Shown here one piece after another: positions 1-42,700 of a DNA stretch of 64,000 bases. The position numbers and the translations under genes were made by a program. The notes beneath the pieces are model-generated. The model ran no database searches. It was not told the DNA's origin and saw only the letters and a list, made by a program, of their open reading frames with translations. Origin of the DNA: Zootoca vivipara (Eukaryota); assembly GCF_963506605.1 (NCBI RefSeq), contig NC_083284.1, positions 124,001 to 188,000 on the forward strand, given 5' to 3'. Each line of letters opens with the position of its first letter. Position 1 is the first letter of the stretch.

Positions 1-33
1 CTGAAGAGGCCCTGTTGAACTTTCCTCCCGCAG

Positions 34-9460: not shown

Positions 9461-9490
9461 GACGAAATTGCTGCCCCCTTGGCAGAACCC

Positions 9491-9496
9491 TTTATT
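9491..9496 (-). terminator. Probable HTRA2 polyadenylation signal (AATAAA on minus strand)
   Basis: TTTATT on plus, about 750 nt beyond the HTRA2 stop. Confidence 0.6.
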
Positions 9497-10249
9497 TGAG
9501 CAGAAAGGAACGAGCCACAAAGCCCGTCCCAGTCCCTGTCTGGCTCTGCGGCAAGTCAGGTCAGGCGGAGCAGCGGCGAGCTCGGTAGGGTTTTAAAACA
9601 ACTTTCTAGTCCTTAAGGACCCTGTGGATGGCACAACCACCAGCCGCCCAGTCTCCATTCATTTACCCCACCCCTTATGTCACCCATGGCAGACAGACCC
9701 CTCAGCCTCCCCCTTAAGGATTCTTGCTTCGCTGCAACACCGTCTCACTGGCTGGGAGCAGAAGGGGCTGCGGATTGGGCCCCGCTGGGCTCGTTCCTCA
9801 TGATTCTGAGTGGGGGGGGGGTAGCAAAAGGGGCCATCTTCCTGCCAATTCCCCCCAGAAGGATGGCCACTTGGCCCCTTTTAAAACAGCTGGGCAAGGG
9901 GCAAACAGTGCCTGTGGAAAAGCCTGGCCTTCAGTGCCCGTTTGCGCAGCACCACGACAAAGGAGAATGACCCCTGATCTCCGCAAAACGTAGGCCTGGA
10001 CAGGTCAATAGCCAACGGGGAAAGGAAAAAAGGAAAGGGCTGCCCCCTCCCTCCAAAAGGAGAGCGCCCAGCTGACATCACACGACCAGGGAAGAGCGAG
10101 ACCCACCAAGCTGGCACCCCGACACCTGCTGGCCCCCCCCTCCTCCTCCCGTGGGGACAGAGGGCAGGATCAGTCCTCTCCACACTCAGGGCAAAGTCCG
10201 TCGTCCTGCCAAGACCCCCAAACGCAGCCGCCACAACCCCCGCCCGCCG

Positions 10250-15462: not shown

Positions 15463-15659
15463 GCTGCTCGGGGCCGCCCGCCCGCCTGCCTCGCGGGGCA
15501 CGCCGGGAAACGTAGTCCTGGGACGCGGCGGAAGGGGCGGGGCGGACGGTGACGCGCTTCCCTTCGGAGCGGGCGCGACCAAGATGGCAGCGGAGGCCCG
15601 TCCGGCCCAGGCCCGTCGCGCTTCCCGCTGAACGGCGCCTCTCGGAGCCCGCGGGCAGC
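15463..15659. promoter_or_regulatory. CpG-island bidirectional promoter shared by HTRA2 and AUP1
   Basis: Only 197 nt between the two ATGs. GGGAAACGTAGTC (ACTACnnTCCC ZNF143/THAP11-type, 15505-15517), GC box, GCGGAAG ETS-like site, AAGATGGC YY1-type site (15581-15588). Confidence 0.85.
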
Positions 15660-18600
15660 ATGGACGCCGCCGCCGCCGCCGCCGCCCCCGTGGCGCCCGA
15701 CCGGCTCTTCGACGCGCACCGGTGAGGAGGGGGGCTTCCCGGAGGGGGTCGGGGCCGGGTCTCTCCTCCCTCCCTCCCCGCTGACGGGCGCTGCTCCTTC
15801 CTTCCTTCCTTCCTTCCCGCAGGCTCCCCGGCGAGGGTCCGCGGGTGCTGCTGGCGCTGCTCCTCTACGCGCCGGTGGGGCTGGCGCTGCTGCTGCTGCG
15901 CCTCTTCATCGGCCTGCACGTCTTCCTGGTCAGCTGCGCGCTCCCGGACAGCGCCCCCCGCCGCTTCATCGTGCGCGTGATGTGCTCGGTGCTGGGCGTC
16001 CTGGTGCGCCAGGAGGAGCCCCGGCCGCGCAGCCTCCGCGCGCGCGTCTTCATCGCCAACCACGTCACCCACTTCGACCACAACGTCCTCAACCTGCTCA
16101 CGTCCTGCAACGCGGTGAGCGGGGAGGCAGGGGTTAAAGAAAGGGGGCGCGGGGAGGCAGAGCCAAGGCTCCCCCCTTGGCACGCTTCTCCCGGGATGGG
16201 CATAGGCATAGCTCTTGCAATTTCTCCTCTTGCTTCGAAGAGATGCAGGTCTTGTTAGTGCAGCTTTTGGCAAGGTAAGAAGCACCCGCTGGATCGAGCC
16301 CATGGCCCACCTAGTCCAGCATGCTGTTCTCCCGGGGACCCACCAGATGCCCCTTATAGGAAACCCACAAGCAGGATTTCAGCACAGGGGCCCTGGCCCT
16401 CCTCCGGTTTCTGGCAGCTGGCATCCAGAAGTACCGGTATTATTGCATCAGACCGTGAAAGCAGAGCAGAGTCATTGTGGTTAGCACATCGCAGTTGTCT
16501 CGTTCTCTTTAAAAACCATCAAGGTGGGTAGCCATCACTGGCTCCTGCAGGAGGGAGTTCCATAGTTTAACGATGGGCTGTATGAAGAACAACTTTATTA
16601 TTTGTCCTAAATTTTCCAGCTCTCAGCCTTGGATGTCCACCTTTGGGAGTTCACCTTAATGTAATAATCGTTGCCATTTCATAGAATCATAGAATCATAG
16701 AGTTGGAAGAGACCACAAGGGCCATCCAGTCCATCCCCCTGCCAAGCAGGAAACACCATCAAAGCATTCTTGACATATGGCTGTCAAGCCTCTGCTTAAA
16801 GACCTCCAAAGAAGGAGACTCCACCACACTCCTTGGTAGCAAATTCCACTGCCAAACAGCTCTTACTGTCAGGAAGTTCTTCCTAATGTTGAGGTGGAAT
16901 CTTCTTTCTTGAAGTTTGAATCCATTGCTCCGTGTCCACTTCTCTGGAGCAGCAGAAAACAATCTTTCTCCCTCCTCCATATGACATCCTTTCATATATT
17001 TGAACATGGTTATCATAACAAGCCATGTCCAGTCGCGAACGACTCTGGGGTTGCAGCGCTCATCTCGCTTTACTAGCCGAGGGAGCCAACATTTGTCCAC
17101 AGACAGTTTTTCTGGGTCTTGTGGCCGCTTCTAGCGAAACCAGAGCAGCGCATGGAAATGCTGTTTACCTTCCCTGTTTATCTACTTGCACTTTGACATG
17201 CTTTCGAACCGCTAGGTTGGCAGGAGCAAGGGACCGAGCAACGAGAGCTCACCCCGTCATGGGGATTCAAACTGCCGACCTTCCAATCAGCAAGCCCAAG
17301 GTTCAGTGGTTTACACCACAGCGCCACACGCGTCGTCGTCCCCCCAGGCCCTGTAGCTAATCCTAAACAGGTATAACTGAAACCCTGTGCCTCTCCTTCC
17401 TGCTTTCTCCCCTCTGTCAAGTTTTAAATGATAAGTGCCTTGGGACAGGGACCTGTACACTGCCAAGTGTCATTCATACTGATGGCACCATATAAACAAA
17501 CAATCAGAGAGTTTTAGAGTTGGAAGAGACCCCAAGGATATATAATTGTGAAATGCTCTCTCTAGGGATGTTCGGCTGGCACCTTCATTATACACCTTTC
17601 GGCGCCGGGTGAAAATGTTCCTCTTCAACCTTGGGCTGATTGACCTTTAAAATAGGTTGTGGAATTGGGGGGGGCAGAAGGCAATTTTAAGAAATAAGAA
17701 TAAATAATAATGGGTACAGTTTCATGCAGCACATAATTTAAACATTGGATTTAGCTCCCACAAGAGTTTGTGATGGCCACCAACTTGGATGGCTTTAAAA
17801 GTGGATGAGACAGATTCACAGCAGAGGAGGGGGCCCTAGCCCTGATGGCTTCCCCCTGCCTGTGGGGCAGAAGGTAGCTTATGCCCTTGTGTCCTGTTTA
17901 TGATCCCTGGGGGCTGGCTTCCCCAGGGCTGCAGGTGCCCCACCCCACCAGGGGAGAGCCAGGGGCTGCCGCCTGTCTCCTGCAGGCCCTGACGGATTCT
18001 CCTCCCAACCAACAGCCTGTGCTGAACGGCACCTCCGGGTTCATCTGCTGGTCCCGGGGCTTCCTGGAGGTTGGGGGTGCAGAGAGCCGAGCCGAGCTGC
18101 TGGAGTCCCTGAAGGCCTACTCCTCCCAGGGGGGCAACCCGCCCCTGCTGCTCTTCCCCGAGGAGACGACCACCAACGGCCGCGTGGGTCTCCTGCGCTT
18201 CAGGTGGGCAGAGCCTCCGGCCTGGTGCCAGGCACCCGAGAAGATTCCCCCGGGGTCAGGCCAAGGCCACGGGGGGAAGCCAGCCAACAGCGGGGTGGGG
18301 GGAGTCTCCTGCTGAGCGTTGCCCCACTGACTGCACCCTTCCCTCTCCAGCTCATGGCCCTTCTCCATCTTGGACAGTGTCCAGCCAGTGGCTCTGCAAG
18401 TCCAGAGGCCTTTTGTTGCTGTGGTGAGTGGGGGGGGCAGGGGGCTGTCTGTTTGCGGCCAGAAAGCGGGATCCTCGGGCACATCCCCCCCCCCAGCAAT
18501 GGGTGTTTGTGAGGGATTCTTCCTCCCCCATCCCAAGGGTCAGGGCCTGCACTTGCAGCAGCCCCCCCCCCAGCTTTTTACTGTTTTCTTTCTCTCCCCG

Positions 18601-21600
18601 CCCCCCAGAGTGTGGCTGACGCCTCCTGGGTGACGGAGCTGCTCTGGACGTTCTTTGTGCCCTTCACTGTTTATCAAGTAAGGTACTAAAAGTCTCTGCT
18701 ACTTCTTTGCATGGGGGAGGAGGGGGGGGACCTGGACAGAAGGAGAGGAGAGAGGCTTTCAGAGAGGAAGGGAAGGAAGCCTCTCTGCCCCTGAGCCCCC
18801 TCTCTCTGCCTCGTTTTGGGGAAGGGGGAGGCAGGTCACCTGGGTAGCCTGAGGCTCGTCCTCCCCTCTTCCCTTCCTTCCTCCCCAGGTGGCTCCCACC
18901 CATTGGCAGACTGGTTGAAGAAACCCGCGAGGAGTTTGCGCTGCGGGTTCAGGGGGTAGGTGCGGGGCCTCGGGGGCTTGGGGTGTGGTCTTGCACGCCT
19001 CTCGGCGGTGGGGTGGGAGGGGCTGCCTCTGTCCGCTCAGGCTGTGTCAGAGCCTGGATTGGGGGCTTCCCAGCCTGAGCCCTGGCCTGCGTCTCTCCTC
19101 CCTGTAGCTCCTGGCCCTGGAGCTGGGTGTGGTGTCGACTCGACTCACTGCTGCTGACAAAGCCGAGCACCTGAAGCGATTGCGCCACAGCCCCTCAGCC
19201 CCCTACAGCCCCCCAGGTGAGTGGGGTGGAAGCTGTTCGTCTCCTGCCTGGGCTCTGCCTGCTCCCAGCTCTCCCCTGGTGGGTGGCGAGGGTCTTGCCC
19301 ACTGTGCTTAGTAGTGGCTGGCAGGGAGGGAGGGAGGGAGGATCCAGGCCACCCCGGAGGCTGTGTCCCTCCCCCCAGGCCTCTGTGCCTCAGCCTCCCC
19401 CTTTCCCCTTGCTTGCCTTCCTTCCTTCCTCTCAGCTCCAAGCCAGCCTTTGGGGGCCCAGGACCGAGCTTTTCCCAGTGTCGCCTCCGCAGAGGATGTC
19501 CGCTGGAGTGGCATGGCCCAGCGTGTCAAAGAAGTCCTGCCCCACGTGCCCCTGGCAGTCATCCGCAAGGATCTAGGTGCGTGGGGGGGGGAAGAGGCTC
19601 CGGGCGGGGGGGGGGGGCAAAAGCATTTGAGTAAGAGCTTGAGGGTGGATTCTCATACCCAGAAGGGTTGGGGAGGGCAGCTTCCCCCCAGGGGCATAAG
19701 AAGGGGGGCAGATGGCCCCTGCCTCCCCCCAGCTGTAGAGCGGCCGAGGGCTTGCCGCTCACATTGCGTCCGTATGGGCTGCCTCTTGCACATTGACTGT
19801 AATAATAATAATAATATTTTATTTATACCCCGCCCATCTGGCTGGGTTTCCACAGCCACTCTGGGCGACTTCCAACAGAAATATTAAAATACAATAATTT
19901 ATTAAACATTAAAAGCTTCCCTAAACAGGGCTGCCTTAAGATGTCCTCTAAAGGTCTGGTACAGTAGTTGTTTTTCTCTTTGACATCTGATGGGAGGGCG
20001 TTCCACAGGGCGGGTGCCACTACTGAGAAGGCCCTCTGCCTGGTTCCCTGTAACTTGGCTTCTCGTAGCGAGGGAACCGCCAGAAGGCCCTCGGAGCTGG
20101 ACCTCAGCATCCGGGCAGAATGATGGAGGTGGAGACGCTCCTTTAGGTATACTGGACTGAGGCCGTTTAGGGCTTTAAAGGTCAGCACCAACACTTTGAA
20201 TTGTGCTCGGAAACGTACTGGGAGGCAACGTAGATCTTTCAAGATGGTGTTATGTGGTCTCGGTGGGCGCTCCCAGTCACCAGTCTAGCTGCCGCATTCT
20301 GGATTAGTTGTAGTTTCTGGGTCACCTTCAAAGGTAGCCCCAAGTAGAGCGCATTGCAGTAGTCTAATCGAGAGATAACTAGAGCATGCACCACTCTGGC
20401 CAGACAGCTGCCCTGGATACAGAATTAACCTGCACCTCCATGGACAGCTGTGAGTCCAAAATGACTCCCAGGCTGCGCACCTAGTCTTTCAGGGGCACAG
20501 TTACCCCATTCAGGACCAGGGAGCCCTCCACACCTGCCCGCCTCCTGTACCCCACAAACAGTGCTTCTGTCTTGTCAGGATTCAACCTCAATCTGTTAGC
20601 CACCATCCAACCTCCAGACACTCACACAGGACCTTCACCGCCTTCACTGGTTCTGATTTGAAAGAGAGGTAGAGCTGGGTATCATCCGCATACTGATGAA
20701 CACCCAGCCCAAACTCCTTTATGATCTCTCCCAGCGGCTGCATGTAGATGTTAAAAAGCATGGGGGAGAGGACAGAACCCTGAGGTACCCCACAAGTGAG
20801 AGCCCAGGGGTCTGAACACTCATCCCCCACCACCACTTTCTGAACACGGCCCAGGAGGAAGGAGCGGAACCACTGTATGACAGTGCCCCCAGCTCCCAAC
20901 CCCTCTAGACGGTCCAGAAGGATGTTATGGTCGATGGTGTCAAAAGCCGCTGAGAGATCCAGCAGAACAAGGAAACAGCCCTCACCTTTGTCCCTAGCCC
21001 GCCGGAGATCATCGACCAGTGCGACCAAGGCAGTTTCAGCCCCATGATGAGGCCTGAATCCCGACTGGAAGGGATCCAAATGGTCTGCTCCTTCCAGGCG
21101 TGCTTGGAGCTGTTCAACAACCACTCGCTCAAGCACCTTGCCCAAGAATGGAAGATTTGAGACTGGGCGATAGTTGGCCATATTGACCGCATCTAAAGAT
21201 GGTTTTTTAAGAAGCGGTTTAATAACTGCCTCTTTCTGTGGGTCTGGGAAGGCTCCCTCACCAAGAGAAGCATTTACCAACCTGTGAAGCCCATCGCCCA
21301 GCCCTTCCCGGCTCGCTTTTATTAGCCAGGATGGGCAAGGATCAAGGAGACAGGTGGTTGGTTTCACTCGTGCAAGCAGCCTGTCCACATCCTCGGAGGT
21401 AACAGATTGGAACTAATCCCACACAACTTGACTAGACAGGACTCTAGCACTCCCTCGCCCCGGCCCTGCTCCCACGGTGGAGTCTACCTCTTCCCAAATC
21501 TGAGTAACTTTATCTGCAAAAAAACTTTGCAAAATCATTGCAGGAGATCATGTGGCCCGTGCTGGGCCTCGATGGAGCAGGTGCTTCCGCTAAATTGCGA

Positions 21601-25481: not shown

Positions 25482-28157
25482 ATGGAGGCGCCCCGGGAAG
25501 ACGTCCTGCAGAGTGAGTGGCCCTGGGCGGGCGGAGGGGAGGAGAAGCGCGCTCCCGCGCCGGGTCCCTTGCGGGACCAGATTGCGGTAGGGGGGGATCC
25601 AGTTCGGTCCCTCTAACTGCCCCTCCCTCCCTGCCTGCCCACTTCCTAGGCTCCTGGGTGGAGGTGACCCCACTTGGCCAGGAGGAGCCCCCCACGCCGG
25701 CCTGTGCGCCCCACCGCGACATGGAACAGATTCTGCTGGAAGCGCAGCTGGAGGTGGAGTCGCCGCGGGCCGAGGGGTAGGTGGCTGGGGGCGGATGACT
25801 CTTTCGTGGGCAGCGGGGTCGGCGGAACTCCTTGCAACTGGCTGTGAGCGCAGCCGGGAAGCGACGGCACCGGGGTGGGGGGGGGCGGGCGGGCTGGAGA
25901 CCAAGCTTGGACTGCCGGGTCTCTCTGGTGAGGGGATGGCAGATCAGCCCCTCAGAGCCAGACAGGCGCTACTGGGCATCCCCGGCTCTTCGCCCTTTCC
26001 TTAACCCCTGCTCAGGGCTGCGTACCCAGGGGGCGGCCCACTGCCTGGCCTGGGGGGAGGCCAGCTCTTCCTTCCAAGTGCTCCCAAAGTCCTCCCGTGA
26101 ACCTGACTCTACTCCCCCCCACACACACTATGGGGCTGTACTGTGGCTTTTACTGGAGTTGGCATAACTGCGCTCCTAAGCAAATTCCAGTCAGCTCCTT
26201 TTAATGCTAATTGCCCAGATGTTCCCTCAGTACTTGCGGTTCTGTTCCGTTCCCTTGTTGGGATGCTCTGAAACGTCAGAGTTTGAACCAAATCGCTTCT
26301 CTTGAGATTTGTCTTTCTGAACTTTTCCCTGTGAAATTGGAAAGTTTGGCTGGTTTTCTTTGGGCTCCCCCTTGCCACATGAACCTGAGGAGGTGAACCC
26401 CACATCCTGCCATTATAAATGTACCAGAGCTGAAAGAATCGTGGAATCACAGAATTGTAGAGTTAGAAGGGACCTTCAAGGCCCATCTAGTCCAGCCCCC
26501 TGAAATGCAGGGATCTCAACAACATGACTGATAGCCATCCAACGTCTCCTTTAAAATCTCCAAGGAAGGAGACTCCACCACCTCCCTAGAGAGTCTCTTC
26601 CGCTGTCAAACAGCTCAGAAACTTCTTCCTGGTGTTTAGTCAGAAGGAGCCTTTGCTGTGTGGGGTCTGGTTTCTACAGCTGCTTCCCCAGAAACACCGG
26701 CCTGGGAGTGGCCACCAGACATCTTCCAGGGACACAAACCCCCCTGCAAGGATGACCTGGGCTTCTTCTGTGTGGTGACAACCTAGTGTCTTTCTCCTGC
26801 CTGAGGCTCCATTGGCCAACCACTTCACCTGCCCAGGAGGACAGGAGGCACCTGAGCATCTTCACAGGGTGTGGACAGGTCTTGCCTGGTAGAGATTTAG
26901 GTCCAGTGAGGGCATCAGCCTCTAAAGGGCTTCACAGCAGCTTCTGAGCATGCTCACAAACAGTATGGCAGTGAAATCTCTCTTGTGTTTCCAGCTCCTT
27001 CCTTGCACTGAAGGCACCTGGTGTGGAGGAGCTGAGCCCAGGGCAGGTGAGTGTCAATGCTGAGGTGTGCAAAGGACCCACCTGGGCCATGGGCTTGTGG
27101 GCTTGTAGCCTCACATTCAGAAGGCGCCAACCAAACTGGGGTCCTGAAAGGTTTAATCTCAGGGGTCTTTGTGGTGACCGGCCCACAAAGCACCTCGAGA
27201 TCCATAAACAGGTGTGTTCACACCCACCCACAAGACATTCCCAGATGGTTGCCCAGGTGATGTCCCCCTCCACCCTTAAAAATATTATGGGATGCTGGAC
27301 TTTCTCTTTGCAGAGGGAAGACGCTGAAGGGTCTGTCCAGCTGGGGACCCTGCCCTGGTCGTGGCCCAGCCCCCCTGAGCACCAAAAGTAAGGATGGCTC
27401 TTCACTGCCTTTCCATGGGGGTCCTTGCCCCCCCTGGGCAAGACTCTCACCCCACTGCTGCTCCACTTTGGACTCTGTCTCTCTGTCTCTCTGCAGGGAG
27501 CTGGCCTGTCTATCCCCTGCGTGTGCCCCCCTGCTCAGCCCAGTTCTACACAGGAGGAGGGGGTTGCGGGACCCCCAGCTGCTGCTTCTGGTCATCCCCT
27601 CTCTGCTGCTCAGCCACGTCTTGGCCTTGGGCCTTGGGTGAGTCGGGGGGGGGGAGAGAGAGAGGCAACGAACCAGGCAGAGTTAGCACCTCCAAACCTC
27701 TTCTCTCACACACAGCAGTGGCCCATCAGTTGAGGAGAAATGGGATCATGCCAAAAAAACATGGGGACGGGGGTTGATTTTTCTCTCCCTTTACAGAAAC
27801 ACCCTTAATTCTGCCCAATACTGCCTGTCTCCTACCCCCCTCCCCTCCAAAACACATTGAGACCTGCTGTGACGTCTCTGAGCTTAGGTTCCCCCCAGGC
27901 ACCTGGCTGGCCACTGCAAGAAGAGGATGCTGGATTCGATGGGTCTCCTCTGGCCTGATCCAGCAGCCTCTTTTCGTGTTCTTCTGCTGCTCAGAGCCTT
28001 CTGTTGTGGGTACCCTTGCCTCTCCCACTTTCCTGGAGGAGGGGAGCAAGAGAGGGGGCTGCTGGCCTTGCCTCTCCTGACCAAGCCCTTTCCCTCTCCT
28101 TTCTCCAGCATTTGTATCGGGAAGCGTCTGGCTGCCTCCCCAGCAAGCAGCCTGTGA
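25482..28157 (+). CDS. BNIP3/BNIP3L(NIX)-family mitophagy receptor paralogue, 6 exons, 157 aa
   Basis: Exons 25482-25512, 25650-25776, 26995-27046, 27314-27387, 27497-27637, 28109-28157 (474 nt, all GT-AG, intron phases 1,2,0,2,2). Product: MEAPREDVLQSSWVEVTPLGQEEPPTPACAPHRDMEQILLEAQLEVESPRAEGSFLALKAPGVEELSPGQREDAEGSVQLGTLPWSWPSPPEHQKELACLSPACAPLLSPVLHRRRGLRDPQLLLLVIPSLLLSHVLALGLGICIGKRLAASPASSL. An alternative in-frame ATG lies at 25431. AATAAA at 28610-28615. Confidence 0.9.
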
Positions 28158-30905: not shown

Positions 30906-31146
30906 GAGACCTCCTCGAATACAGTGTGTGTGTCTTCCCTCCCCTCCTCCCATCCTTTCATTGGGGGTGGGGTGGGGGCTCTGCAAGTTAAACTGGACAG
31001 ATTCGAACAATAAAAAGGCTGGTGCAATCTCTCCACGCTGCAGCTCTGTAGCAGGTTGACTGGTGGGGGGAAGGCAGCCCCCCCCCATGGCTCCTTTTCC
31101 TCTCCTTGGGGAGGGAAACCCCCGGACTCTTCTGGACACGGCACCA

Positions 31147-32740
31147 TCACAGGAACCAGAAACACTTTCGCCGGGACTTCTTGGGCTCCGCTTTCACCAC
31201 GGCCAGATTCAGCGCTGGCGACGGCTCCTGGTGGTTCGGCGTGGCAGCTGGCCTAGCCCCCGGGGGGCTGTGGCTCGGCTCAGGCTCAATGGTGCTCAGC
31301 ACCTGCTGCAAACGCCCCTCCTGCTTCCGGAAATCATGTTCCACACTGTGGGGAGGCGGGGAGCAAGTCAGAGGGTGGCGTCTCCCAAGGAACCCCACTC
31401 AGCCAACGCTAGGAATTGGGGGCAGAGACGGAGGTCTGGCTGGACTGGGCTGCCCCCATCCCTCCTGGGGGGCCATGGGAGCTGGTGCAGAGGAAGCAGC
31501 TCAGCCGGCAGGAGCCTGGGGGGGGGCACCAATGGGAGCCTGCCTGCCTCTGCCGACCCTGGCATGTCTCACCCGTCGCTGCAGCGGTAGAGACAGACCC
31601 GTCAATCCCAATTAGCGCTGAGGCTTTGTGTGAGCCACACAGGCAGGAGGCCAGAAGGAGCCGGCGGGCAGGCAGGCAGGGTGGCGGGAAGAGGAAGAGG
31701 GCCCAGTCCTGCCAGGGAGGCTCTGCACAGCCAGCACCCCCCCCCCAACAGCCTCCAAAGGTCAATGGAAACGTAGGGCAGGAACCGAGAAAAAAGCCTC
31801 CAAGGAGCAGAGGCTGCCGGTCTCTCCTTCCTTGGAGGTTTTTAAGCAGAGGTTGGGAGGCCGTCTGCCAGGATGCTTGCGGGGGGGGGGGGGGCTGGTC
31901 TAGAGGACCCTCGGGGTCCCTTCCAACTCTACAAGTCTAGGATTCTATGGTCTGCGGAAGATGTCTTCCTTGTGCCAAACAGCCAGGGCTGAGAGCAAGA
32001 GCCCTCTAGGACTCGGATTCTAGGGAACCCAGAGCAGAGATACCCGCCTCTCCCTGGACCCCCTTTCACCATCCTGGCTCACAGCCCCCCATGGGGTATT
32101 GACTTCCTCTAACCCCTCCTTAACAAATTGTCCAGTAGCACCTTAGAGACCAACTAAGTTTGTTCTGGGTAGAAGCTTTCGTGTGCATGCACACTTCTTC
32201 AGACTTAGTTGGTCTCTAAGGTGCTACTGGACACTTTTTATTATCTATTTATTTATTCTGACTGCGTCTGTACTTAACCTGAAGCGAACGTTCCCATTGA
32301 AAGGAATGGAAAGTGGACTCATCCATTCCAGATGGTCTCCGGAGGACTCGACCTGAAGTGTACTTAACCTGAAGTATGAGTGTAATTGGTTCTGGAAGTC
32401 CGTACTTAACCTGAAGCGTACTTAACCTGAAGCGTACTTAACCTGAAGCGAACTTTCCCATTGAAAGTAATGGAAAGTGGATTAATCCATTCCAGACGGG
32501 TCCACAGAGTACTTAAACTGAAAGTACACAAACCGAAGTGTACTTAAACCGAGGTATGACTGTGGAATGCCCTCCCATCAGATGTCAAAGAGAATAACAA
32601 CTACCAGTCTTTCTAGAAGACATCTGAAGGCAGCCCTGTTTAGGGAAGCTTTTAATGTTTAATAAATTATTGTATTTTAATACTTCTGTTGGAAGCTGCC
32701 CAGAGTGGCTGGGGAAACCCAGCCAGATGTGGGCGGGGTA

Positions 32741-32777
<37 letters not shown>

Positions 32778-35700
32778 AATATCTAAGAAGGACTCAGAGG
32801 CAGCCTCTGGTATTTAGAAGCAGAATGTAGCGAAAGGGGCTGGTAGCCATTTGCAACTGTCAGCTCCATGGGTCTGGGCCCTGTGGGGCTGCCCCAGCCT
32901 GGCAGGCATTTCCCTGGGATATGGTACAAGCTCACCACAGGCCCTGCAGAGTCTGCTCCTGCCCCATCGCACCCCCATCAAAATCCACTGCCCCTACAGT
33001 GCCAGGGAGCCCAAGGGATCAGGCCAAGAGCTCACCTCGTCCAGCCTCCTGTTCTCACAGTGACCAACCAGATGCCTGTGGGAAGCCTGCAAGCAGGATC
33101 CGAACACAAGAGCAGCCCTCCCCCCTCCTGCGGTTTCCAGCAAGTGACCTTCCGAAGCCTTGCCCCCTCCAACTCTTGAGCCATTCCTGGCTAGGCCAAA
33201 ACAGAGGCCCAAGCAGGGAAGGGGCTCTGTTGCAGAAGAGGGTGACCTGGGCGAGAGAAAAATCGGCTGGGCAGGGAGAAAAGTGGGCCTGCCAGAGATC
33301 CAGCAGGACTGGAAAGGACTGGAAAGCAGCCAAAAGACAACGGAGTTGGGTGGGCTTAGCCTGAAAGTGGGTTGGGGGGGGGAGATGCTGGCCCTTTAGG
33401 GAGGGCAGGGCCGGCTCTAGGTAGAGTCCCGGTGGCGCGGTGCGCCAGGGCGCCGGGCCGGTAGGTGGGGCGCTGCGTGGCAAAGCCGCGCGGAAACCAT
33501 GCTGCGCCCTGCGAGGGCGGGGGTGCCGGAGCGATCTCCGCCGCTCAGCGCCAGGGCGCCCGACCTGCTCGAGAATGCCCTGAGGGAGGGGATCCTCTTC
33601 ACCCCAGACCACATTCTGAACCGGGCCAACGATACAGACCTCCTCTCTCTCCTGAGCCCCCTCTGCCCTCGCTCAGCAGAAAGCGCAGGATCATCACCTC
33701 CATAATACTGAACAGGCTTACATTTTATGTTGATGTGAAATGTGAATGTCAGCAGCCTAGGTCTGGGCTGCAGGTGGATGCCGTGGCCGGCAGCCGAGAG
33801 CAGAGGAGGTGGGGAAGCCAGGGGGGCCTGGTGGGACTGGGCACCCCCAAACCCCACCCCACCCCTGCTCCGAGGCCCCTCCTACCTGTAGATGATGCAA
33901 GCGCTGTTCCGGCAGGTCCCGCAGTTGGTGGTGTCCTGCCCTGTCCGGTAGGACTGCCGCCTGAAACAGAGCAGGATGAGCCCATGAGCCGAAGGTCCCG
34001 GAGGGCACAAGCAGGCAGCCATGCCCCAAGGGCCGGGGGGAGCTGGCTTTGGGGGCCAGGAGAACCCCAGGAGGTCTTAGGAAGGGAAGCCAAGGCAGGC
34101 AGGCAGAAAAGGAGCCCCTCCAGCCTCCCAGCACAGAGGCTGCCCCAAGGCAAGGGGGCTGGCCCCACAGTGGCACTGCTTTGGCTTCCAAAGTGGGCAG
34201 GCACAGTGCTCCATCATTTCAAGCACAGTCAAACCAAAATGTCGTCTTTTGCTGGACAGGCAGCCGAGAGCAGCTGACGCTCACAGCATTTTCCTTTGTG
34301 TTTGCTGGAGAGAACTCTGCGAGAGCCAGTCCCATGGTGCCCTGATGGGCAGAGGGCACAGCCATAGATCTTTTCTCCTTGCCTGCCTGGGCACATGCTC
34401 TCATTTTTGTCTCTTCACCCCCAAGCCAGAAATAGGAGAACATCTGCGAAGTGTCTGAGCTCCAATGTTCAGACACCCTTTTAAGCTCAACTTAAGTACG
34501 CCTCTCAAATTAGCTCATTTGGTTGGAGCCTGGTGCGGAAAACAAAGGTCACAGGTTCGATCCCCGTATGGGATGGCTGCATATTCCTCCATTGCAGAGG
34601 GCTGGGCTAGATGACCCTCAGGGTCCCTAGAGGCCCTGCAAATTTTGTCTCTGTAACTGAATTACCATTTTAAGCCCCCTGAATAAAGCTGTTATTCTGC
34701 CGCAGAAACCCTGAGTGAATAGATGTTGTTTTTAATCTCTTACAAGACTGTTTGTATGATTATTGTTTTCAAAGGGGGAGAAAAGGGGGAAATATCAGGA
34801 GAATCCAATCTGCCTTAAAACATCCTAGATTACTTAAACAGAAAGGCTAAAACTAGCCCATCGAAGGTCCTTTTTAAGCCACAAAAGGGATATCACTCTG
34901 CAGAAGTAAGGAGAATATCTAATAAATATAGGCTCTCCTAGCATCTCTTCGACATCCCTGGCTTCCAAGGGTCAAGGTGGCTCAAGGCCTGGCCGGTGGG
35001 CTCCTTGGGGAACCCAGAACCCACCCAGCCCAAGACCCGCCTCACCCATCGCGCTGGGCCTCCTTCTTCTCCAGATCCTGAATGACATCGAGTAGCACCT
35101 TGATGGTTTGTTGGCTGGTCTCCAGCACCCCCTCGAGGGACTGCAGCTGGGAGTGGATCTCACCCACCCGCCTGGGGAGGTCCTGAGATGCTGGCGGGGG
35201 CTCCCTCTCTGCAGCAGCGGGACACGGTGGCCCTTCAGCCACAGACACCAGCTGCAGGTGGTGGTCCTGGACGCAGGGAAACGTCCCCCCAGGTTGGGCA
35301 GAGAGGCAGGCCTCAGGGGGGCAGCTGCTCCTAGAGGAGGGCAGAAGGGGGTCCGGGGGCTTCTGGGAAGGCGTGGGGGCTGTGGGGTGGGCCTGAGTGG
35401 TGCTGAGGCTCTCCGGGGAGGCCCCGGGCGCTGCTGGTTTTGCTGACTTGGGGGGCCCTGCTGCAGGAAGCAGGCAGGCAGGGGTGGGGTCTTGGGTGGG
35501 GGGGCCCTGAGAAAGGGGGTTGGGGGAAGGGGTGCTCCTCTGGGGGGCACAGGGAGGGGCTCTAGAGGCCTGCTCAGAGGGAGTTTGACAGAGAGGGAGT
35601 TGGCACAGCCAGGGGGCGCCAGAGCTGCCGAGGGGTTGCATGGAGGAGGGGGCACAGTGCTTGCGCTGGGAAGAGCAGCTGGCCAAGAGGCACGGCTCCC

Positions 35701-36238
35701 CCCACCCCGGGTATGGGGGGCATGATCCTCGGGGAGGTGGCAGCCCGGGGCACAGGGTGGCAGGAAGCCTGGGGCGCTGCTGGGTGTGGGGTGAGGCAAG
35801 GGAGCAACCAAGGGCAGGAAGGCTGGCGGTGCCCCCCGGGGGTGGATCCTGGTTGCGGCCCACTGCAGAGGGTGCCCCCTCCTGGGCGAGGTCGCAGGAG
35901 CTCTTGCTGCGGAGGGGCCGCTGCAGGCTGGGCGACGTCTGGCTGGCGGTGCTGATGCCAGTCGCCCCATGGGGATCCGGCAGGGCAAGCAGCAGGCGGG
36001 GCCCGGATTGGGGCCAGCTCCGCCTGGCGCAGTTGGCGGCAGAGGCCCGCGGGGTGGGGCTGCCCAGGGGCTTCTCTCCGCCCTCCTCCAGGTCCTTGAA
36101 GCGCACCTGCCGGGCACGGTGGCGGCGCTGCAGGCGATCCTCAGCACCCGGCGAGTCACGCTTGAGCAGCACGGAGCGGACCCCGGCGGCGGCAGCCTTC
36201 TCTTGGCCGGCCTCCAGGGCTGCCCCCTGGCTGGCCAT
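31147..36238 (-). CDS. INSYN2/FAM196-family (inhibitory synaptic factor 2-like) protein, 3 coding exons, about 488 aa
   Basis: Exons (minus): 35046-36238 (acceptor upstream at 36667-36668), 33886-33960, 31147-31345; total 1467 nt in frame. Family motifs: VRSVLLKRDS, RQVRFKD, STASQT, coiled coil [52 protein letters not shown], C-terminal KKSRRKCFWFL. Confidence 0.9.
32129..32233. mobile_element. Penelope-like-element terminal fragment forming an inverted repeat
   Basis: 31-bp arms 32129-32159 and 32203-32233 around a spacer containing AGCTTTCGTGTGCATGCACACTTCTTCAG; same family as 59004-59235. Confidence 0.7.
32270..32563. mobile_element. Tigger-like MITE remnant with internal 16-bp tandem repeats
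   Basis: CGTACTTAACCTGAAG x3 at 32401-32448; TIR-like end AAACCGAGGTATGACTG; similar to 23309-23496. Confidence 0.65.
33406..33582. mobile_element. GC-rich hAT-type MITE, copy 2 (intron of the INSYN2-like gene)
   Basis: Highly similar to 30336-30505; perfect 8-bp TSD AGGGAGGG at 33398-33405 and 33583-33590. Confidence 0.8.
34511..34630 (+). mobile_element. tRNA-derived SINE with CR1-type tail
   Basis: A-box-like TAGCTCATTTGG and B-box GGTTCGATCCC, followed by a TTGCAGAGGGCTGGGCTAGATGACC CR1-like 3' tail. Confidence 0.6.
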
Positions 36239-37867
36239 GGCAGCCACTTTGCCCCGCCGGGGGGGGGGCGTCACGGCCTCCTGCCCCGCATAACCTCAAG
36301 CCCTTCCGCAGAAAGCGTTCGATTTGGCTGCCCCCTCCGCCGTGGCGCAAAGCATCTCTCCTGAGGGTGCTGCTGCCTGGGGCTCAGCCTCAGCCACTCC
36401 CCAGAGGGCAGCCGGCGCCTCATGGCTGGTGGAGGCCTGGCCTTTGCCCCCCAGCTGGCAGGTGCCCCATGGCCTGCTCTCCTCCTCCCCTCCCCCCTCT
36501 CTAGGGTCCGTCCCTGGCCACCGAGGGCCTCTCTCTCGGCCGGGAGAAGGGAGAGGGGGGAAGGGGGGCCATCCTGCTCACGGCTGCTGCTTCAGCTTCC
36601 TGAGGGTCGGTCACTTGTGGGGCTGGAAGGCACAGCGCCAGCCCATAGCCTCCCTGGGTGGCGGACCTGCAGGGAGAAGAGAAGAGAGGAGATGAGTGGG
36701 TGGAAACCCATTCCAGTTATATGCCACACTACAACCCTGGCTAAGAAAACAGTGCAAAAGTAAGACAGGGATAATGAAAATAAGAGAGGTGTAGAGCTGC
36801 AAGGGACCCCCAAGGGACATCCAGTCCAACCCCCTGCAATGCAACGCAGGAATCCCTGACTTGTTCTATTAACTGGCCTTAACGCTATGCAGAGCAGATG
36901 GCGAGTCATAAGAAGCAGCCTTGCTCAGATCAAGTGACCCAGGAGCCCAGAAGAGAAGGAGAGCCTGCAACTGGATGAGGCCACCAAAGTGGGGGCCCCT
37001 AATCCAGCACCCGGTTCTCCCCCTGGCCAACCAGAGGCCCTCAAAGGGACGCCCACAAGCAGGACCTGAGCGCAGCAACCTTCTCCCACTCTTGTTCTCC
37101 ACCTTTCTAAGGTAGACTGACGCTATCCATGGAGGCTCCACTTAGGAATCACAAGAACCTAAAGGGAGCTCTGTAGCAGCTGGATCAGGCCACCAAAGGG
37201 GCTGACTATTAAAGGGCAGCTGTGGGGGGGGGGGAATTTGCATCAGAGTAGGGCTGCGGGGGATTAACCCTTTCCTTGCCATTCACTTTTCTTCTGAAAT
37301 AACTCCCCAATCCTGTCACCCACCAATCCCATTCAAGGTCTGGTGAAACAGACATTTGCGGAGGACGAGAGGGCGGTCGAGGGCTACTAGCCAGGACGCC
37401 CCTGCTCTGGCTCCACAGCCAGAATCTGCAACGCTTCTGAATCCCAGTTGCAGGAGGGGAGCGTTGCCTTGTGCTTAGCTCCTGCTGGGGGGGGGTTCCC
37501 ACAGGTCGGCCCCTGTGAGGACAGGATGCTGGACTTGACGGGCCCCTGGCCTGATCCAGCAGGCTCTTCTGATGTTCTTAAAGCCCCTCCCAAATGTGCC
37601 CAGTTTCCTTTCGGAGGCTCCCACAATTCCCTCTGCCACGTGGCTAACCCCTAAAAAACACCCTCTCCTGTCCCTCTGCCACCTCCAGTCTCAGGCAGGA
37701 TCACAAAACACAAAGCGACAAGCTCTGGTCTTTGGTGGGTCTGCTGCTGCCTCTGTTGGAAAGGGGGGGGAGGGGGGAGGGGCCCTTCAGCGTCAACAGG
37801 CCAGGAACGCCAGCCAGGCAGAAGCCACAGCTAAGAATAGCAGCATGGCCTTCATGGGGAGCAGGAA

Positions 37868-40711: not shown

Positions 40712-41549
40712 CCAAGGAGAGCTTCCAAGGAGACGAAGCAGTGGGCTTCCAGTAAAGGCCAGCCGGATGGGCTGGGTGCTCCATTGTGAGGGTGCCCATC
40801 CTTGGGGAGAAAGAAGCCCCTCTTGCAGGAAAAGAGATTCCAACGAAACCTTGGGAAGAACTTTCTGCCAGTACAAACGGAAAATACTCTTTCAGAAGGT
40901 GGGGGGGGGCTCTCCTTCCTTGGAGGCTTCTAAGCAGGCGTTTGGGGGTCACATCAAGGGGGTTGGACTAGATGACCCTTGCGGCCCCCTCCAACTCTAC
41001 GATTCTAAGTCAAGCCAGTGCCAAGAGAGAGCACCAGCCCGGCCATGCCTCAGGCTCTCACCTGGCCCTCAGGATCACACACAGAAGCAGAGATGCGGCT
41101 CAGAGTCCAGAGGGCGGGGGGGGGGGGAGAGAGCCAGGGTCCCAGCTGCAAAGAAGAAAGGAGTGGCAAGCCCAGAAGAAGGGGTCCCTGGCTTCCCCAC
41201 ATCCAATATCCCCTGAAGGGCAACGAAATAGCAGCACTTTCGTGGCAGGTGCCTTTCTCAGGGCAGCATGAAGCCTGGGGGGCTGGAGCCTGCGCCCCCA
41301 AAGCACCCCCCACAATGAAGGTGGTCTTTAAGCCCCTGCATTGTTCCCTGCTCCCTTGGCCCGCTGGCAAGGGACGGGGGGGGAGGCGGGGGTCAGACAT
41401 GTATTACGGTAGGGCCTCCCTCCAATAATCCCCAGAACCCCCCTTAAAACCCAGGCGGAGCCAGCCCCCGGACCTCAGGACTTTTGCCCGCAGCCTAAAC
41501 TTTAAGACACCGGATAAAACCATCCTCACCGCCAGCCCCCCCCCCCTCC

Positions 41550-42700
41550 CGCCAAGGGAGTTGCGGACGTGAAAGCGGCGCGTCTCAGAAGTTCCCCGGA
41601 ACACCGCAGGCGCCTCGGAGAAAACTTTTCACCCCACGACAGATCACCCTTTGCGCCTTACTGTCTCTTTCAGATGGTTTTTTTGGGGGGTTGGGGCAAA
41701 ATAACCCTCCCACAGGCGCCACAGACTAGCCCCCACCCGCTTACAAGGGCTCCCCAAAGGCTTCCACCGCCCCCCGTTCCGCTTGCGCGCCCAGCCGCGC
41801 CGCGATCCAGAAAGGCGTTCGTTCGCAGCATCCGCCCGGCCGAGGTAGCAGCCCCTGCTTCGTAGCGGGGTGTGTGTGTGTGAGGGTGTGGAGTAACCAA
41901 GCCAAGCCGAGGCTTGGTCCACCTAGCTCAGCCTTCTCGACACGGGCTGGCAGCAGCGGCTCTCTTCCGGGGAAGCCAGGCCGGCGAAGCCATTCGCGGG
42001 CGAGCCTTCTGCATGCCAAGCAGCTGCTCTGGCGCGGAAGAGGGGCTGCCGACCTTCCCGCAGAGCTGCCTCCCCCCCCCACCCATGGCAGCCATAAAAA
42101 AGACCTCTGCCAATCTGCGCGCCCTGCCATCCCGAGCCGAAGGCGACGGCTGCTCAGGATGCCCTCCGTCCCCGCTGCGCGCTCCTTGCCTGCCTGCTCG
42201 CTCGCTCGCTCGCCCACCAGCCCGGCGCCGGCGAGAGGGTCCTACGCCGCCGAAGCGCTCGGCCGAGAGAGGCGGAGCCGGGGCGGGCGGGCGGGCGGCG
42301 TCGCGCCTTCCCGGGAGAGCGACCGGCGCTCCGCCGCCGCCGCCGCCTCCCTGGGCGGGGCTTCGCCTCGGCGGGCGGCCCGGCCACGTGCGCGACCCCG
42401 AGCGGAGCCCCAGCAGCTGCACGTCGCGCGCGGGGATCCTCCTCTCTCTGCCTCCCGGCTTGGCCCTGGCTTGGGAGCCGCGCGAAGAAGACGCCTCCGA
42501 GCATGTGCAGAGGGCGTGGCGGCCCCTCTCCTCTGGGCTTAGCCGGTGGGGCTTCCTGGCAGGATTGGCCCTCTTAGGGGGGGCTGGGATTTGCTGCAGC
42601 TCCTGGGCCCTGAGGCTCACGGGCCTGAGCCGACTAAGCCCCGCTGCCCCTCGGGGCTGCCCCGATCCTAAGGTCCGGGGGCTTTTTTGTAAGGCCCTTT
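41550..42700. promoter_or_regulatory. CpG island, probable promoter / non-coding first exon of the INSYN2-like gene
   Basis: Dense CpG with no recognisable protein, about 5 kb upstream (minus-strand sense) of the acceptor at 36667. Candidate minus-strand donor ACAG|GTAAGG at about 41661. Confidence 0.55.

What the first reader, a model, noticed from the sequence alone, without database searches (positions are those of the whole stretch)
31147..36666. Free-standing INSYN2/FAM196-family gene with no DOCK host gene
Seen: an intact 488-aa CDS with the family layout (large first coding exon, 75-nt Cys-rich exon, terminal exon). Established: mammalian INSYN2A and INSYN2B are nested in introns of DOCK1 and DOCK2. 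No DOCK-like exons were recognisable here, and the flanking genes are the BNIP3-like gene and DQX1. Inference: a third INSYN2 ohnologue that outlived its host gene (or left it) and was later lost in mammals.
Basis: partly seen in the sequence, partly recalled or inferred. Interest (0 to 1): 0.78.

Follow-up and report, generated by a model that had tools for sequence, protein, structure and literature searches.

The report
Third INSYN2-family gene outside any DOCK
This lizard has an intact, spliced third gene of the INSYN2/FAM196 inhibitory-synapse family that lies between ordinary neighbour genes and not inside a DOCK gene; sharks, fishes, amphibians, turtles and birds have it too, but no mammal protein of this type was found.

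Summary
On the minus strand there is an intact three-coding-exon gene of 488 codons: 36238-35046, 33960-33886 (75 nt) and 31345-31147. It matches Pfam FAM196. A spliced contig from a public run joins all three exons at these GT-AG borders. A public 488-aa Zootoca vivipara model named 'INSYN2B protein-like' matches exon 1 at 395/397, so the gene is already annotated.

It is orthologous to neither INSYN2A nor INSYN2B. Trees give three clades, and this gene's clade runs from chimaera and sharks to birds and lizards (support 97/98). Nesting inside tetrapod INSYN2B is rejected (AU p 8e-73). True INSYN2B exists in squamates and lies on another contig in Pogona and ten bird or turtle species. No named mammal protein falls in this clade.

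The window reads LOXL3, HTRA2, (AUP1), BNIP3-like, this gene, a 24-kb repeat-rich spacer, then DQX1. This is the published Lbx2/Tlx2 paralogon, sister to the regions that carry DOCK1, DOCK5 and DOCK2. No DOCK Pfam domain was found in 925 open segments, but that scan is insensitive.

Loss of a DOCK host is an inference. I found no paper on a third member. First-stage notes on this same window already flagged the BNIP3-like neighbour and the two-gene block. Interest is moderate.

The parts
35046..36238 (-). Coding part of the large first coding exon (398 codons; the last Gly codon is split by the intron). ATG at 36238, donor GG|gtgagg after 35046.
   Evidence: Pfam FAM196 E 5e-17; 395/397 identical to P0001; the exon end is joined to exon 2 in an X2 contig.
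36239..36666 (-). Possible 5' untranslated part of the first coding exon, up to an acceptor-like ctgcag|G at 36666. Unverified.
   Evidence: Sequence only. No read depth at 35300-36699 in any of the 4 runs.
33961..35045 (-). Intron 1 (gt...ag).
33886..33960 (-). 75-nt exon that encodes the invariant C-x2-C-x4-C motif ([24 protein letters not shown]).
   Evidence: spliced contig; C411, C414 and C419 are invariant in 66 family members.
31346..33885 (-). Intron 2 (gt...ag). It holds SINE-like and tandem repeats at about 31.7-33.1 kb that attract heavy repeat-derived RNA read depth.
31147..31345 (-). Terminal coding exon (65 codons plus TGA at 31149-31147), ending in the polybasic-Cys-FWFL tail.
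   Evidence: (Pfam E 1.5e-11).
31041..31146 (-). 3' UTR, at least this far.
   Evidence: X2 contig piece 31345-31041.
41500..42499 (.). CpG island (GC 0.64-0.76, CpG observed/expected 0.84-0.98) about 5 kb upstream of the coding exon. Candidate promoter or non-coding first exon; unverified.
   Evidence: No Pfam family in its ORFs.
25482..28157 (+). Left neighbour, a BNIP3-family third paralogue lying tail-to-tail with this gene. Coordinates come from note s1-850905.
   Evidence: note; WPSPPE found at 27362 on the plus strand. The Pfam segment scan did not detect it.
60814..61131 (+). Right neighbour, the first coding exon of a DEAH/DEAQ-type helicase (DQX1-like). It is head-to-head with this gene across a 24-kb spacer rich in LINEs and SINEs.
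   Evidence: Walker A motif; DHX15/Prp43 N-terminus E 5e-8; sequence.
1..19400 (.). LOXL3-like exons (Lysyl_oxidase and SRCR, within 1-10.2 kb) and HTRA2-like exons (Trypsin_2 and PDZ, within 9.9-19.4 kb).

Best explanation
This is a functional third member of the vertebrate INSYN2/FAM196 family. It dates at least to the common ancestor of jawed vertebrates. It is kept in cartilaginous fishes, ray-finned fishes, lungfish, salamanders, caecilians, turtles, birds and lizards, and is missing from all named mammal proteins that I saw. In Zootoca it is a free-standing gene of about 5.6 kb with three coding exons, in the LOXL3-HTRA2-(AUP1)-BNIP3-like-[this gene]-DQX1 block. That block is the fourth (Lbx2/Tlx2) paralogon of the regions that carry DOCK1+INSYN2A, DOCK2+INSYN2B and DOCK5. 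Shown here: the gene structure, the splicing, family membership, a separate clade, co-existence with INSYN2B in the same genomes, and the neighbours. Inferred: the gene descends from the 2R duplications, its DOCK-A host copy was lost early, and the guest and the adjacent BNIP3-family gene survived. Also inferred: it works like INSYN2A, a neuronal adaptor of the inhibitory postsynaptic density. The conserved parts would serve this role: an N-terminal basic motif, a 40-45-residue helical or coiled-coil stretch, the invariant C-x2-C-x4-C stretch, and a polybasic-Cys-FWFL tail that may attach it to membrane.
For: Structure and splicing. Clade: a careful IQ-TREE of 51 rows by 473 columns gives the third clade at 97/98, 2B at 100/99 and 2A at 100/100. 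Conserved blocks only, 66 rows by 243 columns, give 98/98, 100/99 and 100/99. FastTree of 103 C-terminal domains gives 97. The inner topology of the third clade follows the species tree: chondrichthyans, then ray-fins and lungfish, amphibians, sauropsids. The Zootoca C-terminal domain is 60-65% identical to 7 of 7 chondrichthyan clade members, against 44-45% to 4 of 4 squamate INSYN2B and 51-52% to 5 of 5 INSYN2A. For the N-terminal block the figures are 40-56%, 36-37% and 25-29%. AU rejects sauropsid genes plus tetrapod 2B as one clade (lnL difference 326.6, p 8e-73). Twelve species have true INSYN2B on one contig and the third-clade gene on another, for example Pogona vitticeps 313,455,771 against 196,997,442 bp. 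The same holds for Hemitrygon and Pleurodeles; Callorhinchus and Protopterus also have both genes. Struthio has 2A and the third gene. Score step: 100 rows at 303-145 bits, none of the 98 named ones a mammal, then teleost 'protein INSYN2B' at 124 bits or less. Locus. Passages of PMC2446394 give the human order TLX2-DQX1-AUP1-HTRA-LOXL3-DOK1, four Lbx/Tlx paralogons, and chicken Aup1/Htra2/Loxl3 on chromosome 4. Bird third-clade genes lie on contigs of 57-166 Mb in most chromosome-level assemblies; several others are much smaller (Phasianus 29.4, Phaethornis 23.0, Heliangelus 22.8, Melanerpes 16.6 Mb).
Against: The AU test does not reject trees in which the sauropsid genes share one side of a branch with all of 2B (lnL difference 14.5, p 0.083; 13.7, p 0.09 on conserved blocks) or with all of 2A (9.9, p 0.26). 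These constraints can be met by sliding the long 2B or 2A stem onto the sauropsid branch. That placement does not fit the presence of 2A and 2B in fishes and sharks, but monophyly of the third clade is not proven by this test. No lacertid INSYN2A or INSYN2B was seen (0 lacertids among the 120 rows listed). The tree has no outgroup, and cyclostome genes join 2A by long branches. I obtained no gene context for any homologue. Absence from mammals rests on annotated proteins only. Expression evidence is thin: one contig at depth 3.67 and about 2 raw reads in X12, tissue unknown. The DOCK scan is insensitive. Function is by homology alone.
Confidence: 0.8

Rival explanations
1. The gene is the lizard orthologue of INSYN2B (as NCBI names suggest) or of INSYN2A, has moved out of its DOCK host, and the nested copy is absent.
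For: Sources name it 'INSYN2B protein-like', and the Anolis carolinensis member is named plain 'INSYN2B'. No lacertid 2A or 2B appeared in the listed rows.
Against: The 2B clade (100/99) and the 2A clade (100/100) both exclude it. AU p is 8e-73 against grouping with tetrapod 2B. 'Protein INSYN2B' exists in 5 squamates (Rhineura, Salvator, Eublepharis, Euleptes, Pogona), and in Pogona it lies on a different contig from the third-clade gene. Ostrich has both FAM196A and the third gene.
Confidence: 0.02
2. It is an ancient paralogue, but it was never left behind by a lost host. Either it left a DOCK intron by local rearrangement, or the ancestral gene was not nested and nesting arose separately in DOCK1 and DOCK2.
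For: No trace of a DOCK gene is present. PMC6135963 (passage) reports SLC4A5 and MTHFD2 beside GnRH1/DOCK5 in chicken, gar and elephant shark; I recall these as human 2p13 genes. So parts of this neighbourhood have been linked to the DOCK5 region in other vertebrates.
Against: The gene is adjacent to a third BNIP3-family gene. From my recall of the human map, BNIP3 lies near DOCK1 and BNIP3L near DOCK5. The whole block is a published separate paralogon with its own LOXL, DOK and TLX members. Both points favour retention of the block as a unit. Nesting of both 2A and 2B (recalled; the passages only show them at the DOCK1 and DOCK2 loci) is explained most simply by a nested ancestor.
Confidence: 0.15
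3. It is a decaying or non-functional copy, or an annotation artefact.
For: Read depth on the exons is near zero in three raw RNA runs, each sampled at about 6 in 100. The middle of the protein is Pro-rich and evolves fast: only 36-48% identity to the full-length Elgaria, Sceloporus, Hemicordylus and Anolis carolinensis proteins, and local matches over under half of exon 1 for Pogona and Anolis sagrei.
Against: The 488-codon frame is open and both introns are canonical. A spliced contig joins the three exons. All family-invariant residues are present. The C-terminal domain is 60-65% identical between lizard and sharks.
Confidence: 0.03

Closest known systems
INSYN2A (FAM196A, InSyn2)
   Same: Same Pfam family. 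It shares the N-terminal motif, the coiled-coil stretch, C-x2-C-x4-C...IIY and the ...KCFWFL tail. In the trees it lies on the same side of the 100/99 split as this gene. Its function is cited as an inhibitory postsynaptic density protein (PMC11840842 passage citing Uezu 2016).
   Different: It forms a separate clade on a long stem (100/100). It is 51-52% identical in the C-terminal domain and 25-29% in the N-terminal block. In humans it shares a ~500-kb interval with DOCK1 as the only other coding gene, whereas this gene has LOXL3, HTRA2, BNIP3-like and DQX1 as neighbours. Mammals have it.
INSYN2B (FAM196B)
   Same: Same family and the same motifs. The source names call this gene 'INSYN2B protein-like'.
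   Different: It forms a separate clade (100/99), and AU rejects grouping with tetrapod 2B. Squamate 2B is 44-45% identical in the C-terminal domain. In Pogona and 11 other species it is a distinct gene on another contig. It lies at the DOCK2 locus in humans (legend passage of PMC9492544).
RefSeq and UniProt models of the same orthologue group in other species (named 'INSYN2B protein-like', 'inhibitory synaptic factor 2A-like', 'basic proline-rich protein-like', 'formin-like protein 20', 'mucin-2' and others)
   Same: Same clade, same length class, and conserved N- and C-terminal blocks.
   Different: None in kind. The names are inconsistent and none marks the group as a third family member.
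The third BNIP3-family gene next door (note s1-850905)
   Same: It is also an extra family member absent from mammals, and it lies 3 kb away in the same block. It may be a second survivor of the same paralogon.
   Different: It belongs to an unrelated protein family. I checked only one motif and its strand.

Membership tests
FAM196 / INSYN2 family (Pfam PF15265) | Match to the family profile above the curated cut-off | tested here: met
   Exon 1 scores 62.9 bits and exon 3 scores 44.9 bits against a cut-off of 27. Three segments hit again in the segment scan.
FAM196 / INSYN2 family (Pfam PF15265) | Family-invariant residues: the helical stretch, Y402, G405-Q406-D407, C411, C414, C419, I421-Y422 and the C-terminal CFW(F)L | tested here: met
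   All are present in P0001 and in the window exons. They are invariant or at least 90% conserved in 66 sequences that include lampreys.
FAM196 / INSYN2 family (Pfam PF15265) | Exon layout: a large first coding exon ending ...(E/D)G, a 75-nt Cys exon ending ...IIY, and a terminal exon | tested here: met
   Shown directly for this gene. For other members it is only indirect: truncated models or isoforms end at the same two points, for example ...RDG...SEG and ...ACIIYR.
FAM196 / INSYN2 family (Pfam PF15265) | Localisation at inhibitory postsynapses | not testable with these tools
   Known for InSyn2 only, as cited in PMC11840842.
INSYN2B orthologue group | Falls inside the tetrapod INSYN2B clade | tested here: not met
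   (the 2B clade at 100/99 excludes it); AU p 8e-73.
INSYN2B orthologue group | Is the only INSYN2B-like gene of the genome and lies at the DOCK2 locus | tested here: not met
   Five squamates have a separate 'protein INSYN2B'. The window shows LOXL3, HTRA2 and DQX1 and no DOCK domain. Zootoca's own INSYN2B was not seen.
INSYN2A orthologue group | Falls inside the INSYN2A clade | tested here: not met
   The 2A clade (koala, wombat, ostrich, 3 teleosts) has 100/100 support and excludes it. A position on the stem of 2A is not rejected (p 0.26).
2R ohnologue of INSYN2A/2B | The clade spans cartilaginous and bony vertebrates and co-exists with the other paralogues | tested here: met
2R ohnologue of INSYN2A/2B | Lies in a chromosomal region paralogous to those of INSYN2A and INSYN2B | tested here: inconclusive
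   The window neighbours match the Lbx2/Tlx2 paralogon of PMC2446394. PMC3265131 lists DOCK1/2/5 and FAM196A/B in 2R paralogons. The link between the two schemes, with DOCK1 at 10q26, DOCK5 at 8p21 and DOCK2 at 5q35, rests on my recall of the human map. Synteny in other species was not obtainable.
2R ohnologue of INSYN2A/2B | Duplication dated to the early vertebrate genome duplications (rooted tree) | tested here: inconclusive
   There is no outgroup. Lamprey and hagfish genes join 2A by long branches (95/89).

The most novel reading that the evidence does not exclude
The gene and its BNIP3-family neighbour are the last two survivors of the fourth, DOCK-less copy of an ancestral DOCK-A/INSYN2/BNIP3 neighbourhood. 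A nested 'guest' gene would then have outlived its host for over 400 million years. It is also the slowest-evolving, most ancestor-like member of the family, yet it is the one mammals lost. If so, non-mammalian vertebrates have an inhibitory-synapse scaffold component with no mammalian counterpart, and the family is a clean natural experiment on whether nested genes depend on their hosts.
Probability: 0.45. Interest if true: 0.55.

Novelty: new member of a known kind. Interest (0 to 1): 0.42.

Why it matters
INSYN2A and INSYN2B are studied as the only two members of a family linked to inhibitory synapses and to the 10q26 deletion phenotype. Published paralogon tables list just FAM196A/B (PMC3265131). 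A third, gnathostome-wide member shows that mammals have a reduced set. It explains the confusing database names, including an Anolis gene labelled INSYN2B. It fills the empty FAM196 slot of the fourth paralogon. It also offers a rare case in which the fates of a nested gene and its host after genome duplication can be compared across all four copies: host plus guest twice, host only once, guest only once. In practice, knock-outs of insyn2a or insyn2b in zebrafish, chicken or lizard models should allow for this third gene.

Tried and rejected
I used only the contig lengths printed by the protein searches. These show different contigs, not gene neighbourhoods.

DOCK relics. I had no DOCK protein from any tool, and sequence from memory is barred, so no tBLASTn was possible. 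Instead I scanned all 925 stop-free segments of at least 45 aa against Pfam at E <= 0.01. No DOCK family was hit. The same scan missed BNIP3-like, AUP1 and DQX1, so it is a weak negative. A relic of a host lost before the jawed-vertebrate radiation would not be recognisable in any case.

AUP1. I found only a sub-threshold CUE hit (E 0.042, about 21996-22046, plus strand), so I did not verify AUP1 myself.

The family profile finds no solved structure (0 hits at E <= 1). An idea that C411/C414/C419/H426 form a zinc knuckle was dropped as stated: H426 is not among the columns conserved at 90% or more in 66 sequences. A four-Cys site with C484 stays open.

Expression. Three raw RNA runs give almost nothing on the exons. 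The heavy depth at 31.7-33.1 kb and 36.7-36.9 kb comes from repeats and is not evidence for this gene.

Literature. 169 papers mention FAM196A/B or INSYN2A/B, and none of the 25 listed concerns family evolution. 'INSYN2C', 'insyn2' plus 'ohnolog', insyn2aa/ab/ba/bb and 'fam196c' gave 0 papers. A search for bnip4 gave 11 papers, with nothing on synteny in the listing. Supplements were closed. Additional file 1 of PMC2446394 (gene lists around Lbx2 loci) and the figures of Kim et al. 2011 (not held) might already show a FAM196-like gene at this locus.

Notebook searches for INSYN2, FAM196, DOCK1/2/5, dedicator and TLX2 found nothing.

The AU results that do not reject stem placements are reported as evidence against, not discarded.


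Full report
WHAT IS THERE. The minus strand of window 31147-36666 carries an intact gene of the FAM196/INSYN2 family. The long ORF 35042..36274 contains the first in-frame ATG at 36238. Read from the sequence, the first coding exon ends at 35046 (GG|gtgagg). A 75-nt exon follows at 33960-33886 (cag|G...CAG|gtagg), and the last exon starts at 31345 (cacag|T) and stops at TGA 31149-31147. Exons 2 and 3 translate to [24 protein letters not shown] and [11 protein letters not shown]...KKSRRKCFWFL*. Pfam FAM196 (PF15265) matches exon 1 (62.9 bits) and exon 3 (44.9 bits), with a cut-off of 27.

The word search with exon 1 alone returned P0001, a public 488-aa model named 'INSYN2B protein-like [Zootoca vivipara]'. 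It is 395/397 identical over exon 1. The window is therefore Zootoca vivipara or a very close relative, and the gene is already in public annotation. P0001 stood in for the spliced product in all later comparisons.

TRANSCRIPTION. The look-up of sequencing runs gave four DNA holders and three raw RNA runs of the same species label, plus small contig sets guessed to be RNA. Read laying on 30900-36899 showed one 443-nt contig of run X2 (depth 3.67, minus strand). Its three pieces lie on 35108-35045, 33959-33886 and 31345-31041. It skips both introns at the modelled GT-AG borders (the single G at the first junction can be assigned to either side) and runs 106 nt past the stop. The three raw RNA runs, each sampled at about 6 in 100, have almost no depth on the exons; X12 has 1.36x at 31100-31299. 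The large depths at 31.7-33.1 kb and 36.7-36.9 kb come from repeats. So the gene is spliced as modelled, expression in these samples is low, and the tissue is unknown.

WHICH FAMILY MEMBER. One search gave 113 hits, 103 of them named and none a mammal. These were lacertids, other lizards, many birds, turtles, sharks, rays and fishes. One search covered the C-terminal 139 residues of P0001 and gave 259 hits with 120 listed. It shows a score step. The first 100 rows run from 303 to 145 bits and include lizards, birds, turtles, a caecilian, newts, axolotl, lungfish, sharks, rays, chimaera, gar, paddlefish and teleosts. None of the 98 named rows is a mammal, crocodilian, frog or snake. After the step come teleost 'protein INSYN2B' rows at 124 bits or less.

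The claim needs INSYN2A and INSYN2B sequences and rests partly on absence, so I ran the full-library profile search. It gave 240 representatives at E <= 0.001, with 150 listed. I named 30 of them through the listing of cluster members. One group holds koala and wombat INSYN2A, ostrich FAM196A, and Alosa, Centroberyx and Misgurnus INSYN2A. Another holds marsupial, rodent, frog, salamander, coelacanth, lungfish, chimaera and ray INSYN2B, plus teleost INSYN2B and a teleost-only set of long proteins with 'mucin' names. Lamprey and hagfish proteins form their own long branch. The unnamed representatives inside our clade turned out to be a crane and teleosts. The last word search, with coelacanth INSYN2B (567 hits, 120 listed), showed 'protein INSYN2B' in turtles, gharial, tuatara, many birds, monotreme, marsupials, placentals and five squamates: Rhineura, Salvator, Eublepharis, Euleptes and Pogona. 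No lacertid was among the 120 listed.

TREES. FastTree on 103 C-terminal domains, a 75-column tree that includes truncated models, a careful IQ-TREE on 51 full-length rows (473 columns, LG+C20+F+G4) and a careful tree on conserved blocks only (66 rows, 243 columns) all recover the same three clades. In the careful trees the clade holding the Zootoca gene has 97/98 and 98/98 support, INSYN2B has 100/99, and INSYN2A has 100/100 and 100/99. Inside our clade the order is chondrichthyans first, then ray-fins and lungfish, amphibians, and sauropsids. This is what an old orthologue group should show.

Identities say the same. The Zootoca C-terminal domain is 60-65% identical to 7 of 7 chondrichthyan members of the clade, 44-45% to 4 of 4 squamate INSYN2B and 51-52% to 5 of 5 INSYN2A. 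For the N-terminal block the ranges are 40-56%, 36-37% and 25-29%.

AU TESTS. Holding the 11 sauropsid genes together with the 14 tetrapod INSYN2B rows costs 326.6 lnL (p 8e-73). A tetrapod-level duplicate or orthologue of INSYN2B is therefore excluded.

Holding the sauropsid genes with all 2B rows costs only 14.5 lnL (p 0.083; 13.7, p 0.09 on conserved blocks). Holding them with all 2A rows costs 9.9 lnL (p 0.26). These are not rejected. Such constraints can be satisfied by moving the attachment point of the long 2B or 2A stem onto the sauropsid branch of our short-branched clade. That arrangement is hard to reconcile with 2A and 2B being present in fishes and sharks. Even so, monophyly of the third clade is strongly favoured rather than proven. 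The tree is unrooted. In unrooted form it reads (2A + cyclostomes | third + 2B), so I make no claim about which paralogue is the closest.

SAME GENOMES, DIFFERENT PLACES. Printed contig lengths put INSYN2B and the third-clade gene on different contigs in 12 species:
- Pogona vitticeps: 313.5 against 197.0 Mb
- Gavia: 22.2 against 65.3 Mb
- Apteryx: 27.4 against 88.5 Mb
- Grus americana: 22.3 against 82.9 Mb
- Patagioenas: 20.8 against 81.5 Mb
- Pelecanus: 49.2 against 87.9 Mb
- Phalacrocorax: 46.8 against 84.8 Mb
- Phaenicophaeus: 21.2 against 79.0 Mb
- Lathamus: 21.3 against 166.0 Mb
- Podargus: 20.7 against 81.4 Mb
- Emydura and Pelodiscus, whose assemblies are fragmentary, so the evidence there is weaker

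The same holds for Hemitrygon and Pleurodeles. Callorhinchus and Protopterus also have both genes. Ostrich has FAM196A and the third gene. I did not see Zootoca's own INSYN2A or INSYN2B.

THE LOCUS. Pfam on stop-free segments maps Lysyl_oxidase and SRCR to 1-10.2 kb (LOXL3) and Trypsin_2 and PDZ to 9.9-19.4 kb (HTRA2). It finds only LINE reverse transcriptase in 19.2-30.2 kb, FAM196 alone in 30.1-40.9 kb, LINE RT/EN in 40.5-52 kb, and nothing credible from 51.4 kb to the end.

AUP1 shows only a sub-threshold CUE hit near 22.0 kb. The BNIP3-like gene at 25482-28157 comes from note s1-850905; I confirmed only its WPSPPE motif on the plus strand at 27362. It therefore lies tail-to-tail with our gene, about 3 kb away. 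A Walker-A search led to a first coding exon at 60814-61131 (+), whose best solved relatives are DHX15/Prp43 N-termini (E 5e-8). This fits DQX1, which is head-to-head with our gene across 24 kb of LINE- and SINE-rich DNA. A CpG island at 41.5-42.5 kb could be our gene's promoter.

No DOCK family was hit in 925 of 925 segments. Because the same scan missed three real neighbours, I rate it a weak negative. The stronger argument is spatial. A DOCK-A gene has over 50 exons (recalled). None of the well-conserved ones appears in the 3-kb and 24-kb gaps, and the left flank is packed with unrelated genes.

PARALOGY FROM PRINT. Passages of Wotton et al. 2008 (PMC2446394) give the human order LBX2-PCGF1-TLX2-DQX1-AUP1-HTRA-LOXL3-DOK1. 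They describe four Lbx/Tlx paralogons: chromosome 10 with LOXL4; chromosome 8 with LOXL2, DOK2 and NKX2.6; chromosome 5 with TLX3 and DOK3 (teleost Tlx3 is linked to Dock2); and the Lbx2/Tlx2 locus with LOXL3, DOK1 and AUP1. They place chicken Aup1, Htra2 and Loxl3 on chromosome 4. A passage of PMC3265131 lists DOCK1/2/5 and FAM196A/B among the families that define four 2R paralogons, so only two FAM196 genes were known to those authors. That DOCK1/INSYN2A/BNIP3 map to 10q26, DOCK5/BNIP3L to 8p21 and DOCK2/INSYN2B to 5q35 is my recall. The passages show only that INSYN2A shares a ~500-kb interval with DOCK1 and that FAM196B lies at the DOCK2 locus.

On this basis the third INSYN2 gene and the third BNIP3-family gene fit only the fourth region, which has no DOCK. 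One complication: PMC6135963 reports SLC4A5 and MTHFD2 (human 2p13 genes, by recall) beside GnRH1/DOCK5 in chicken, gar and elephant shark. A past link between parts of this neighbourhood and the DOCK5 region therefore cannot be excluded.

HOW IT PROBABLY WORKS. The conserved parts are:
- an N-terminal VRSVLL-RDSP...QVRFKD block and an STA(I/S)QTSPSLQ block;
- a fast-evolving Pro/Ser-rich middle;
- a helical stretch at residues 357-397 (weak Prefoldin-like hit);
- the invariant C-x2-C-x4-C...IIYSVE-DFR stretch, which spans the 75-nt exon and the start of the last exon;
- a polybasic-Cys-FWFL end.

By homology with InSyn2, the most likely role is a neuronal adaptor of inhibitory postsynapses, with the tail and cysteines helping membrane or scaffold attachment. 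This is inference.

VERDICT. The reading as a third, ancient, free-standing family member that is absent from mammals is supported. The 'host was lost' story is the best-fitting inference but was not tested. The gene is annotated under misleading names, and I found no paper that describes it. I class it as a new member of a known kind, of moderate interest.

Noticed in passing
window 41500-42499: A strong CpG island (GC up to 0.76, CpG observed/expected up to 0.98) lies in the spacer, 5 kb upstream of the INSYN2-like coding exon. Its ORFs match no Pfam family. It may be the gene's promoter or a non-coding first exon, or it may belong to an unrecognised transcript.
   Followed up: partly
window 46312-48237 (-) and 20591-21412 (-): These are LINE elements. 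The first has a 452-aa reverse-transcriptase ORF and an adjacent 170-aa endonuclease ORF; the second is a 266-aa RT fragment.
   Followed up: partly
window 32300-32560 and 32720-32790 (intron 2): Tandem copies of a ~14-nt unit (ttcaggttaagtac-like) and an (ATTT)n tract sit next to a SINE-like element. RNA reads pile up here with many back-joints and strand-switch joints, as expected for a dispersed repeat family rather than this locus.
   Followed up: no
P0021 (Anolis carolinensis), P0019 (Anolis sagrei): The Anolis carolinensis protein that NCBI names plain 'INSYN2B' falls in the third clade, not with INSYN2B. This looks like a naming error. The Anolis branch is also very long.
   Followed up: partly
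P0200, P0202, P0224 and about 20 more representatives: A teleost-only group of 670-1300-aa proteins with a FAM196 C-terminus attaches to the INSYN2B clade by a long branch. Sources name them mucin-2, mucin-12 or SRRM1. It is probably a fast-evolving teleost duplicate of insyn2b.
   Followed up: partly
P0192, P0278 (lampreys), P0218 (hagfish): Cyclostomes have FAM196 genes that group together and join INSYN2A by long branches (95/89). Their genomic context, nested in a DOCK or not, would bear directly on the host-loss question.
   Followed up: no
window 35702-35704 and 35108-35110 (codons 179 and 377 of exon 1): The window differs from the public Zootoca model at two residues (W against R at 179, Q against R at 377). 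The X2 contig and X12 reads carry further single-base differences in exon 3 and the 3' UTR (31243, 31259, 31078). These are probably differences between individuals or populations.
   Followed up: no
window 37572-38444 (+): This 290-aa ORF has a run of 16 Arg (poly-Pro on the other strand). It is a low-complexity purine/pyrimidine tract, has no family match, and is most likely not a gene.
   Followed up: partly
taxon lists: Among the listed third-clade hits there are no snakes, geckos, crocodilians or frogs, while salamanders, a caecilian, turtles, birds and several lizard families are present. There may be further lineage-specific losses, or these proteins may simply be unannotated or unlisted.
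   Followed up: no
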